From the NCBI GenBank assembly GCA_047495785.1, contig JBLDXI010000108.1:2291-66290 (forward strand): a stretch of 64,000 bases of DNA. Reading direction: 5' to 3'. Position 1 is the stretch's first letter. Each line of letters starts with the position of its first letter. Made by a program: the position numbers and the translations under genes. The notes below the pieces were generated by a model. That model did no database searches and was not told where the DNA came from. It saw only the letters and a list, made by a program, of their open reading frames with translations. Of this stretch, positions 14,373-15,307 are shown in pieces. This stretch comes from Lepidodermella squamata (lineage: Eukaryota > Animalia > Gastrotricha).

Positions 14373-15307
14373 AGTAAATTACAAGCAAAAAGAAAAAGAG
14401 CACGTGGCAAATAAATAATCTACAAACAAGAGAAAATGACAGGGCACCACGTGTTCGGTGGACCCCAAAAAAGCGCGAAAAAATCTCAGTCGAGCAAATT
14501 TAATTTCGAACTGAGTTTGAATTATTTACAAGTTTTAAAACGTACTTTCAAGAGCGCGTAAGCGTAATACGGTCTGAAACGATAAGAAGCCACCAAACCA
14601 AGGCCGTACCAGCAGTAATCAAGGCCTCGCTACTCAGCTGTTAGCAAGCAGAGCAGTTCCGACTGAGCGAAAGACGGCTTGTTCGTTAACCACGAGCTTT
14701 CTTCAAAAAAGTAACCGAGGGTTCTTCCCTAAGAGTAGGGCGGCTGTCGTGCGGCGCGAAGACGGAGGTCGGATCCAGAGAAAACGAAAACGTGAAAATA
14801 AAACTTCCTGGGTTTGTACTAACCTCAGAAAATTTAATATTCAATCGCAGTTAGTGTTGATACTAACCTCAGAAAATTTAATATTCAATCGCAGATATTT
14901 ACTATAAATTTGCAAAAATTTTGCCGGTATCCGCCGGTTTTGTTTTAAATTTTTCACTTTTTTCGCCCAAAATCGAGGAGTCCTAAGGCATAGGAACGCG
15001 GAAAAATTTCCTATGAGTCGATCGAGAAGCGCTGATATTAAAACCGCGGCTGAATGATGAAGGATTCTGAGTAATTCTACAGCCGGAAAATGTCACATTT
15101 CATTGATCGAAAAATTGACCTCGTTAAATTGTCTCGGTTGCGCAACAATGTAACATCTGGCACAATCGAAGTAAACAAATCCCATTGCGTAACACAGTAA
15201 GTTGATGGTAAACGAGTTCCGCTGTTCTCAGGTGCCATTTTTTGCGTACAATTCGGTTTTTCAAGCGGTTTTTTTTATAGGATAGCAAGGAATAAGCGGG
15301 ATCGTGT

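What the first reader, a model, noticed from the sequence alone, without database searches (positions are those of the whole stretch)
14817..14853. Element B's 5' end carries an extra SL-B exon plus donor: a fossil of its transcript start
Seen: inside the 19-bp TSD, B begins (on -) TAA-CTGCGATTGAATATTAAATTTTCTGAGGTTAGTA. This is a 34-nt target copy that stops 2 nt short of the ATCTGCG start shared by SL-A and SL-B. Inference: the template RNA was initiated at the SL-B start of a parental copy (12-bp TSD) and reverse-transcribed almost to the cap, with a few non-templated bases. This independently maps the transcription start and supports promoter hijacking.
Basis: partly seen in the sequence, partly recalled or inferred. 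Interest (0 to 1): 0.82.

Follow-up and report, generated by a model that had tools for sequence, protein, structure and literature searches.

The report
Host-promoter leader fossil on a LINE
The extra copy of a spliced-leader exon is real and does record a jumping gene being transcribed from its host gene's promoter, but it belongs to the neighbouring element A, not to element B, which landed inside it later; the mechanism is already known from other site-specific retrotransposons.

Summary
The letters are exactly as described: TAA plus a 34-nt perfect copy of SL-B (exon from CTGCG through GTTAGTA) at 14853..14817 (minus strand), between a full SL-B gene start and element B.

The assignment to B is very probably wrong. 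Contig C83 carries the identical TAA junction with no B. There the second SL-B copy runs on uninterrupted into element A. Over 451 nt, C83 equals the window locus minus B and one 12-bp repeat.

Four further independent A insertions also carry an SL-B leader:
- C124 and C117 lie in SL genes, and their upstream break falls at the same place as in C83, 13 nt after A's nick.
- C97 and C126 lie at ectopic spacer sites, and their leader starts at AAATATCTGCG.

So the 34 nt are the front of element A's 52-nt transduced leader. B inserted into it later with its usual 12-bp duplication, as in its three other full-length copies.

The idea of promoter hijacking is supported, but for A. For B there is only one weak hint, on C67.

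Seventy-two dispersed SL-capped retrocopies put the SL start at AAATATCTGCG.

The mechanism parallels SLACS and R2. What is new is that these SL-targeting elements are of the APE type.

The parts
14854..14900 (-). Promoter-proximal SL-B gene start. The exon AAATAT+CTGCG...CTGAG occupies 14900..14868. The first 14 intron nt, GTTAGTATCAACAC, occupy 14867..14854. This is the upstream target flank of the element A insertion.
   Evidence: It is identical to the intact SL-B at 23359..23313. The upstream 107 nt are identical to C83.
14854..14866 (-). Upstream copy of element A's 13-bp target-site duplication, TTAGTATCAACAC.
   Evidence: It matches 405..393 after A's poly(A). The break lies at the same position in C83, C124 and C117.
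14851..14853 (-). TAA, untemplated filler at the 5' join of element A.
   Evidence: The identical filler is present in C83, where B is absent.
14817..14850 (-). The finding itself: the front 34 nt of element A's transduced SL-B leader. It runs from exon position CTGCG to the splice donor plus GTTAGTA. It is now separated from the rest of the leader by B.
   Evidence: In C83 it continues without a break into TCAACACCACTTCGACTG|TTGTTTGC, which is element A.
14817..14828 (-). Upstream copy of element B's 12-bp target-site duplication, CTGAGGTTAGTA.
   Evidence: The same 12-bp duplication flanks the B copies on C47 and C118.
8743..14816 (-). Element B, a 6074-bp APE+RT non-LTR retrotransposon. ORF1 is at 14372..12342 and ORF2 at 12358..9362. 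It has no poly(A) and ends ...ACACATTCC.
   Evidence: Over 1800 nt at the 5' end it is 99.7-99.8% identical to the three other full-length copies (those three are 99.72-100% identical to each other). Over about 1800 nt at the 3' end it is 98.4-99.7% identical to the four other copies.
8731..8742 (-). Downstream copy of B's 12-bp target-site duplication, CTGAGGTTAGTA.
8713..8730 (-). Rear 18 nt of element A's transduced leader: the SL-B intron stretch TCAACACCACTTCGACTG.
   Evidence: It is contiguous with the front part of the leader in C83.
406..8712 (-). Element A, copy 1. It is an APE+RT non-LTR retrotransposon with a poly(A) tail, and it is the owner of the leader.
   Evidence: Its first 296 nt are identical to the A copy on C83.
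393..405 (-). Downstream copy of A's 13-bp target-site duplication, TTAGTATCAACAC. The rest of the SL-B intron follows it.

Best explanation
The window is an animal rDNA array. Each spacer carries a 5S gene and two spliced-leader RNA genes, SL-A and SL-B, on the minus strand.

**How element A works.**
- Element A is an APE-type LINE that lives in the SL-B intron, 25 nt after the splice donor.
- It is transcribed from the SL-B promoter as a co-transcript. Its RNA therefore starts with a 58-nt SL-B leader: AAATATCTGCG...GAG|GTTAGTATCAACACCACTTCGACTG.
- New insertions start by target-primed reverse transcription at a bottom-strand nick at GAGG|TTAGTA. The top strand breaks 13 nt further on.
- Usually the cDNA end that is complementary to the leader pairs with the identical target sequence. 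The junction then comes out seamless, with an apparent 24-bp duplication. This step is inferred.

**What happened at this locus.** That pairing failed. The cDNA had stopped 6 nt short of the RNA start, at CTGCG, and was joined end to end with a TAA filler. The result was a visible 52-nt second SL-B copy in front of A. The unit was then duplicated, or exists as two alleles (C83 and C108). In the C108 copy, element B, a second APE-type LINE specific for TTTT|CTGAGG, inserted into the promoterless leader copy with its normal 12-bp duplication. The 34 nt of the finding are the part of A's leader that lies upstream of B.

**Shown:** the sequence anatomy, the locus without B, the independent leader-bearing A copies, and the SL 5' end.

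**Inferred:** RNA-level co-transcription, the homology-guided seamless join, and the order of events (insertion of B rather than loss of B).
For: 1. **A locus with the same junction but no B.** A genome-wide search for two SL-B copies no more than 30 nt apart finds only three loci: the window, C83 and C124. Gaps of 31-61 nt give none.
2. **C83 looks like the empty site.** C83 reads ...GGTTAGTATCAACAC|TAA|CTGCG...GGTTAGTATCAACACCACTTCGACTG|TTGTTTGC, which is element A with no B. Over 451 nt it equals the window locus with B and one 12-bp repeat removed, with 0 mismatches. This is the classic pairing of an empty site and a filled site.
3. **C124 is an independent A insertion with a leader.** The leader starts ATCTGCG behind a CTGCGAT stutter. 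The upstream break is at the same nucleotide, after TCAxCAC.
4. **Most A junctions are seamless, and five events show a leader.** Of 24 A 5' junctions read, 18 are seamless and 6 loci (5 events) show the leader. The C117 copy lies in a third SL-like gene, again broken 13 nt after GAGG. The C97 and C126 copies lie at ectopic spacer sites and have the full leader from AAATATCTGCG.
5. **All B junctions agree under this parse.** All four full-length B copies then share one junction, GTTAGTA|CAAACCC, with a 12-bp duplication. No other B copy has a 19-bp duplication. The 5'-truncated C91 copy has 4 bp.
6. **The leader start matches the SL RNA start.** In 72 dispersed SL-A- or SL-B-capped retrocopies, the match to the gene upstream of CTGCG is AAATAT in 31. 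It never runs beyond what chance allows.
7. **Both elements are LINEs.** The ORF2 of A and of B each has Exo_endo_phos and RVT_1 domains.
8. **There are precedents.** SLACS transcription starts at +1 of the interrupted SL gene (PMC3447711). R2 RNAs that keep 28S sequence give uniform 5' junctions (PMC3774820).
Against: - No RNA data exist, so co-transcription is inferred from DNA fossils only.
- Comparing C83 with C108 cannot by itself tell insertion of B from precise loss of B through its 12-bp repeats.
Identity is shown for only 451 nt.
- Whether C83 and C108 are alleles, array duplicates or redundant assembly is unknown.
- The homology-guided seamless join is an analogy to R2 and was not tested.
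- Two of the three filler bases also match the gene one base out of register (TAACTGCG against TATCTGCG), so the exact end of the copied stretch is ambiguous by up to 3 nt.
Confidence: 0.8

Rival explanations
1. The leader is B's own. A B RNA that started at the SL-B promoter of a parental B copy with a 12-bp duplication was copied almost to its 5' end. It was then inserted, with a 19-bp duplication and a TAA filler, into an SL-B gene already occupied by A. C83 arose later by precise loss of B through recombination between the 12-bp repeats.
For: - Parental-type B copies with promoter + SL-B...GTTAGTA|CAAACCC exist on C47, C67 and C118. An RNA of that kind is therefore plausible.
- The 19-bp repeat is real.
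- On C67 the upstream GTTAGTA does not match the local downstream target GTTACTG. This would fit a B RNA that brings its own SL-B leader.
Against: - It needs a precise 6-kb deletion between 12-bp repeats to explain C83.
- It needs B's top-strand break to coincide by chance with the break used by independent A insertions on C124 and C117.
- No other B copy has a 19-bp duplication or a visible leader.
- A is independently shown to carry such leaders in four other events.
Confidence: 0.12
2. The reverse transcriptase switched template. At the 5' end of an element RNA that began at the element's own first base, it jumped onto a free SL-B RNA. This would resemble the U6/L1 chimeras.
For: SL RNAs are abundant small RNAs. 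The 5' stutters (CTGCGAT repeats) in C124 and in dispersed copies show that the enzyme does slip or jump at SL 5' ends.
Against: The leader ends exactly at the genomic SL-B/A junction (...CACTTCGACTG|TTGTTTGC) found in 18 seamless A copies. That point is 25 nt into the intron and is not an end of any SL RNA species. A jump would have to land on the same internal nucleotide in five independent events.
Confidence: 0.04
3. A DNA-level tandem duplication of part of the SL-B gene, by replication slippage or unequal exchange, or an assembly error. It would be unrelated to retrotransposition.
For: rDNA arrays recombine often. The junction occurs on two contigs, so DNA-level copying of the whole unit did happen.
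Against: - The duplicated block starts within 6 nt of the SL RNA 5' end and is separated by an untemplated TAA.
- The upstream break is at A's second-nick position, and it sits directly in front of an A copy.
- Ectopic A copies carry the same block at non-SL sites.
- The same structure on two contigs argues against an assembly error.
Confidence: 0.03

Closest known systems
SLACS / CZAR / CRE (CRE clade) in trypanosomatid SL RNA genes, and NeSL-1 in nematode SL1 genes
   Same: These are site-specific non-LTR retrotransposons that live only in spliced-leader RNA genes. For SLACS, transcription is reported to start at +1 of the interrupted SL gene and run into the element (PMC3447711, discussion). 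That is the same use of the host promoter inferred here.
   Different: Those clades encode a restriction-like endonuclease (PMC4640811). From my own knowledge, they also insert inside the SL exon. A and B encode an APE-type endonuclease and insert in the intron, at or just after the splice donor. Their host SL genes sit inside rDNA spacers.
R2 elements whose ribozyme cuts upstream in the 28S rRNA (Eickbush, Burke and Eickbush 2013, PMC3774820)
   Same: The element is co-transcribed with its target gene and has no promoter of its own. Its RNA keeps up to 36 nt of target sequence at the 5' end. The retained sequence is proposed to anneal to the target and give uniform 5' junctions, while junctions vary when it cannot. 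Here 18 of 24 A junctions are uniform. The exceptions expose a leader of up to 58 nt (58 nt only in the two ectopic copies).
   Different: R2 has a restriction-like endonuclease, is transcribed by Pol I, and uses an HDV-like ribozyme. Here the RNA 5' end is simply the SL gene's transcription start, and no Rfam ribozyme was found. The endonuclease is APE-type.
Tx1-clade APE-type LINEs that target small RNA genes (for example Keno in U2 snRNA genes), and R1 in 28S
   Same: These are APE-type, sequence-specific LINEs in multicopy RNA genes. Dependence on co-transcription with the target, and its help for target-specific integration, are discussed in PMC4494074.
   Different: SL RNA genes have not been listed among their targets in the papers I could read (PMC4640811, PMC4494074). 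I did not determine the clade of A or B.
5' transduction by human L1 / SVA
   Same: Upstream source-locus sequence is carried at the 5' end of a new copy inside its target-site duplication. It reveals the promoter that was used.
   Different: In L1 and SVA this is sporadic read-in from chance upstream promoters. Here it is systematic, from the one host promoter the element always sits behind.

Membership tests
APE-type non-LTR retrotransposon (LINE) | ORF2 with an N-terminal apurinic-like endonuclease domain followed by a reverse transcriptase domain | tested here: met
   B ORF2 has Exo_endo_phos at residues 13-229 (1.2e-12) and RVT_1 at 550-813 (1.9e-29). A ORF2 has Exo_endo_phos_2 (1.1e-12) and RVT_1 (9.7e-28). 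The reverse transcriptase region matches L1 ORF2p and R2 structures.
APE-type non-LTR retrotransposon (LINE) | Target-site duplications, 5'-truncated copies and untemplated or stuttered 5' joins, as expected from target-primed reverse transcription | tested here: met
   B has a 12-bp duplication in 4 copies. The truncated C91 copy has a 4-bp duplication and a 7-nt filler. A has 13-bp duplications with TAA or CTGCGAT fillers.
Site-specific LINE co-transcribed from its host gene's promoter (SLACS-like / R2-like life style) | Insertion essentially restricted to one site of a multicopy RNA gene | tested here: met
   All 5 B copies are in SL-B-type sequence at TTTT|CTGAGG. Of the 24 A 5' junctions read, 22 are in SL genes and 2 are ectopic in the spacer.
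Site-specific LINE co-transcribed from its host gene's promoter (SLACS-like / R2-like life style) | Element RNA starts at the host gene's transcription start | tested here: inconclusive
   Genomic fossils support it for A. Five independent A copies carry an SL-B leader that starts at AAATAT, AATAT, AT or CTGCG. These match the SL 5' ends seen in 72 dispersed SL-capped retrocopies. No RNA data could be examined. For B there is only the C67 flank mismatch.
Site-specific LINE co-transcribed from its host gene's promoter (SLACS-like / R2-like life style) | Uniform 5' junctions where the RNA retains upstream target sequence | tested here: met
   Of 24 A junctions, 18 are seamless at ...CACTTCGACTG|. 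All 4 full-length B junctions are at GTTAGTA|.
CRE / NeSL / R2 clades (the known SL- and rDNA-specific clades) | Restriction-like (PD-(D/E)xK) endonuclease C-terminal to the reverse transcriptase, and no APE domain | tested here: not met
   Both ORF2s have an N-terminal APE domain. A and B therefore work like SLACS and R2 but are not members of those clades.
R2-type processing | [quoted passage not shown] | tested here: not met
   No ribozyme family appears in the whole window at Rfam gathering scores. None appears at E<=10 in 14200-15000, which covers B's 5' UTR. A divergent ribozyme cannot be excluded.
5' transduction | Source-locus upstream sequence lies inside the new copy's target-site duplication, and a matching source-type locus exists | tested here: met
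   The leader lies between A's 13-bp duplication plus filler and the A body. Eighteen A-occupied SL-B genes have exactly the junction that the leader reproduces.

The most novel reading that the evidence does not exclude
In this animal the retrotransposon community is built around the spliced-leader genes in two ways.

1. APE-type LINEs (A, probably B and at least two more families) have no promoter. They use the SL-B promoter, and the SL-B leader on their RNA acts as a homology guide for seamless 5' integration. This would be an APE-type re-invention of the R2 'upstream cleavage' strategy.
2. At least 15 dispersed retroelement families retrotranspose from RNAs that received SL-A or SL-B by trans-splicing.

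The rare failed joins, such as the one in this window, would then be natural experiments. They expose both the second-nick position and the transcription start.
Probability: 0.45. Interest if true: 0.6.

Novelty: new variant of a known kind. Interest (0 to 1): 0.5.

Why it matters
It corrects the anatomy of a nested insertion. It also gives DNA-only evidence, from five independent events, that an APE-type LINE is transcribed from a spliced-leader RNA gene promoter and carries the host leader into new copies.

Until now that life style was documented for SL genes only in elements with a restriction-like endonuclease (SLACS). The leader-guided junction idea was documented only for R2.

The same data map the 5' end of two previously undescribed spliced leaders to AAATATCTGCG. 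They also show, from genomic sequence alone, that both leaders are really trans-spliced.

Finally, the data offer a natural test set for how the 5' end of a LINE is joined. It contains seamless, filler and ectopic junctions of one element.

Tried and rejected
- **Self-cleaving ribozyme at B's 5' end.** Nothing in Rfam, either at gathering scores for the whole window or at E<=10 for 14200-15000.
- **Clade of A and B from solved structures.** Only generic reverse transcriptase matches to L1 ORF2p and R2 appeared. The endonuclease domain alone matched nothing useful. I ran no further search on this, because the family (APE+RT LINE) was not in doubt.
- **The two leader sequences in the literature.** No paper holds them. 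'Gastrotrich' together with 'spliced leader' gave nothing relevant.
- **Fetching the whole C83 unit to compare all of A.** Only 451 nt were compared.
- **Reading TAA as templated.** TAACTGCG matches the gene's TATCTGCG at 2 of 3 positions. That is about what chance gives, so it was left as filler.
- **Using the 'GGT' after CTGA in dispersed copies as a sign of unspliced co-transcripts.** Rejected. Other dispersed copies continue with A, T, GC, GG or GA after CTGAG. The same element bodies also occur with SL-A. The junction is therefore the splice site.
They were re-run in shorter form.

Full report
**Context.** The window is a eukaryotic rDNA array with a unit of about 8459 bp.
- 18S, 5.8S and 28S lie on the plus strand. 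A 5S gene lies on the minus strand in each spacer.
- Also on the minus strand are two spliced-leader-like genes, as earlier notes of this scan describe. SL-A is near 22885 and SL-B starts near 23359.
- Two long insertions interrupt SL-B genes. Element A spans 39976..~31780, and a second copy spans 8712..406. Element B spans 14816..8743.
- The ORF2 of each element has an APE-type endonuclease domain and a reverse transcriptase domain.

**The observation.** On the minus strand the text reads:

...AAATATCTGCG...CTGAGGTTAGTATCAACAC | TAA | CTGCGATTGAATATTAAATTTTCTGAGGTTAGTA | CAAACCCAGG...

- The 34-mer lies at 14850..14817 and TAA at 14853..14851.
- The 34-mer is a perfect copy of SL-B from its CTGCG to seven bases past the splice donor. 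It has six exact matches in the window against none expected.
- The 19-bp repeat CTGAGGTTAGTATCAACAC is present at 14872..14854 and at 8742..8724.

**B elsewhere in the genome.** The genome (121 Mb in 151 contigs) holds four full-length B copies and one truncated copy.
- On C47, C67 and C118 the normal SL-B promoter and exon run to ...GAGGTTAGTA|CAAACCC. The 3' junction is ...ACACATTCC|CTGAGGTTAGTA..., which gives a 12-bp duplication.
- The C91 copy is truncated at about position 3340. It is joined after ...TTTTCTGA with a 7-nt filler and has only a 4-bp duplication.
- The full-length copies are 99.7-100% identical over their first 1800 nt. All five copies are 98.4-99.7% identical over about the last 1800 nt.
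No other B copy shows a leader or a 19-bp duplication.

**The decisive comparison.** I searched the whole genome for two SL-B copies no more than 30 nt apart. This returned three loci: the window, C83 and C124. Gaps of 31-61 nt returned none.
- C83 has the identical ...TCAACAC|TAA|CTGCG... junction but no B. Its second SL-B copy runs on through GGTTAGTATCAACACCACTTCGACTG directly into TTGTTTGC, the first bases of element A.
- Over the 451 nt I could read, C83 equals the window locus with B and one copy of CTGAGGTTAGTA removed, with no mismatch. This is the relation of an empty site to a filled site.
- C124 is an independent event. It reads ...GGTTAGTATCATCAC|CTGCGAT|ATCTGCG...GGTTAGTATCATCACCACTTCGACTG|TTGTTTGC, again in front of A. 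The upstream flank is broken at the same nucleotide.

**A junctions genome-wide.** A has at least 25 full-length 5' ends, and I read 24 of them.
- Eighteen are seamless: promoter, SL-B exon, 25 nt of intron, then A.
- The C117 copy lies in a third SL-like gene, ...TTCTGAGGTTAGTGTCCGTTT|AATATCTGCG.... It is again broken 13 nt after GAGG and carries the SL-B leader.
- The C97 and C126 copies lie at non-SL positions in the spacer. They carry the whole leader from AAATATCTGCG.
- Five independent A insertions therefore carry an SL-B leader that ends exactly at the genomic SL-B/A junction.

**Re-parsing the window locus.** The simplest history has three steps.
1. An A RNA that began at the SL-B promoter of an A-occupied gene was reverse-transcribed to CTGCG. 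It was joined to the target with TAA. The target was nicked at GAGG|TTAGTA and 13 nt downstream, giving the duplication TTAGTATCAACAC at 14866..14854 and 405..393.
2. The unit was copied, or segregates as two alleles (C83 and C108).
3. B inserted into the promoterless leader copy with its regular 12-bp duplication, at 14828..14817 and 8742..8731.

The '19-bp TSD' is B's 12 bp plus the next seven intron bases. Those bases are present both in A's leader and in the upstream target. I give that alternative about 0.12.

**Where the SL RNA starts.** The SL-B exon occurs 511 times in the genome at up to 2 mismatches. Dozens of these are outside rDNA, at the 5' ends of at least 15 dispersed repeat families.
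- The exon always ends at CTGAG and is followed by family-specific sequence.
- The same element bodies also occur behind the SL-A exon.
- One family is joined at two positions four bases apart (ATAG|GGGACGG).
- These copies therefore derive from trans-spliced RNAs.
- In 72 such copies, the sequence upstream of CTGCG matches the gene as follows: 6 or 7 nt (AAATAT) in 31, 5 nt in 12, 4 nt in 5, 2 nt in 14, and 0-1 nt in 10. It never matches further than chance allows.
- The two ectopic A copies start at the same AAATAT.
The leader in the window stops six bases short of it.

**Mechanism, and which steps are shown.**
- Shown: A's leader-bearing copies, the +13 break, the uniform junctions, the locus without B, and the SL 5' end.
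- Inferred: A has no promoter of its own and is made as an SL-B co-transcript.
- Inferred: in the usual case the leader part of the cDNA pairs with the identical target, so the junction is seamless. The leader becomes visible only when that fails or when the target lacks homology (the ectopic sites and the third SL gene). This is the model proposed for R2 elements whose RNA retains 28S sequence (PMC3774820).
- For B the only hint of the same behaviour is C67. There the upstream GTTAGTA does not match the local downstream GTTACTG. Recombination between B copies would explain that equally well.

**Comparison with what is known.**
- Use of the SL promoter by an SL-gene-specific retroposon is reported for SLACS in Trypanosoma brucei (PMC3447711).
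- The known SL-specific clades, CRE and NeSL, have a restriction-like endonuclease (PMC4640811). A and B are APE-type, so they work like SLACS and R2 but are not members of those clades.
- APE-type LINEs that target other small RNA genes are known, for example Keno in U2 genes. The benefit of co-transcription for them has been discussed (PMC4494074).
- I found no paper with these leader sequences.
- The finding is a new variant of a known kind. The mechanism is not new. The combination is new: an APE-type LINE, the intron of an SL gene inside rDNA, and a series of natural junction variants.

**Limits.**
- There are no RNA data.
- Only 451 nt of C83 were compared.
- The clades of A and B are not determined.
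- The organism is not verified.
- One A junction, on C104, was not read.

Noticed in passing
G000 dispersed sites, e.g. L052, L060, L079-L083, L095-L111, L115-L134: At least 15 dispersed repeat families begin with a complete SL-B or SL-A exon joined at CTGAG or CTAAG to family-specific sequence. Identical bodies occur behind either leader. One family is joined at two sites 4 nt apart. This is genomic proof that both leaders are trans-spliced and that spliced RNAs are retrotransposed.
   Followed up: partly
L052, L071, L072, L081, L082, L060, L073; L135:117-124: Short stutters lie at the 5' end of SL-capped copies, for example CTGCGAT repeated three times, or CTGCGAATAT before CTGCG. They look like reverse-transcriptase slippage on the AT microhomology at the RNA 5' end.
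   Followed up: no
window 8712..8693 and 39976..; L142, L149-L151, L155: The first bases of element A are TTGTTTGCTAGTTTGCCGG, or CTATTTGCTAG in a subfamily. They resemble the next stretch of the SL-B intron (CTGTCTATTAGAATGCGCGG). A's 5' UTR may itself be an old, diverged captured leader.
   Followed up: no
L008 (C67) and L006 (C47), downstream of B; also L027, L039, L040: On C67 and C47, B sits upstream of two other LINE-like families. Each has a roughly 340-aa CCHC zinc-knuckle ORF1 and a 5' end that is an SL-B exon plus a diverged intron (GTTACTGTCG...). L027 is a dispersed copy of such an element that starts at AAATAT. Three of the four full-length B copies lie in genes already occupied by another LINE.
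   Followed up: partly
L156 (C117:14347-14456): A third SL-like gene type, ...ATCTGCTATTTCTCGATATTATTCTGAG|GTTAGTGTCCG..., which is also used as a target by element A.
   Followed up: no
L094:4240-4270 with L007 (C91): A 5'-truncated B copy is joined after ...TTTTCTGA with the filler ACGCTGG. The filler duplicates a B sequence about 20 nt downstream. The target-site duplication is only 4 bp.
   Followed up: yes
L056, L061, L068, L074-L076, L078: An A-related family is inserted after CTGAGGT, with TTTT (or TGTT) followed by AGAGGTTAGTATCAATTCCGAATTG.... It carries a diverged partial copy of the SL exon end and intron at its own 5' end. At least seven copies sit in rDNA units.
   Followed up: no
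L137 (C141) and L141 (C70): Two otherwise seamless A junctions lack one C exactly at the +13 break position (TCAACAC^ACTTCG). This fits a join made at that nick.
   Followed up: no
window 5936-7498 and 37297-38748: The two A copies in the window differ in the number of 246-bp, 108-bp and 153-bp tandem repeats inside ORF1, which is 1731 aa in one copy and 1669 aa in the other.
   Followed up: no
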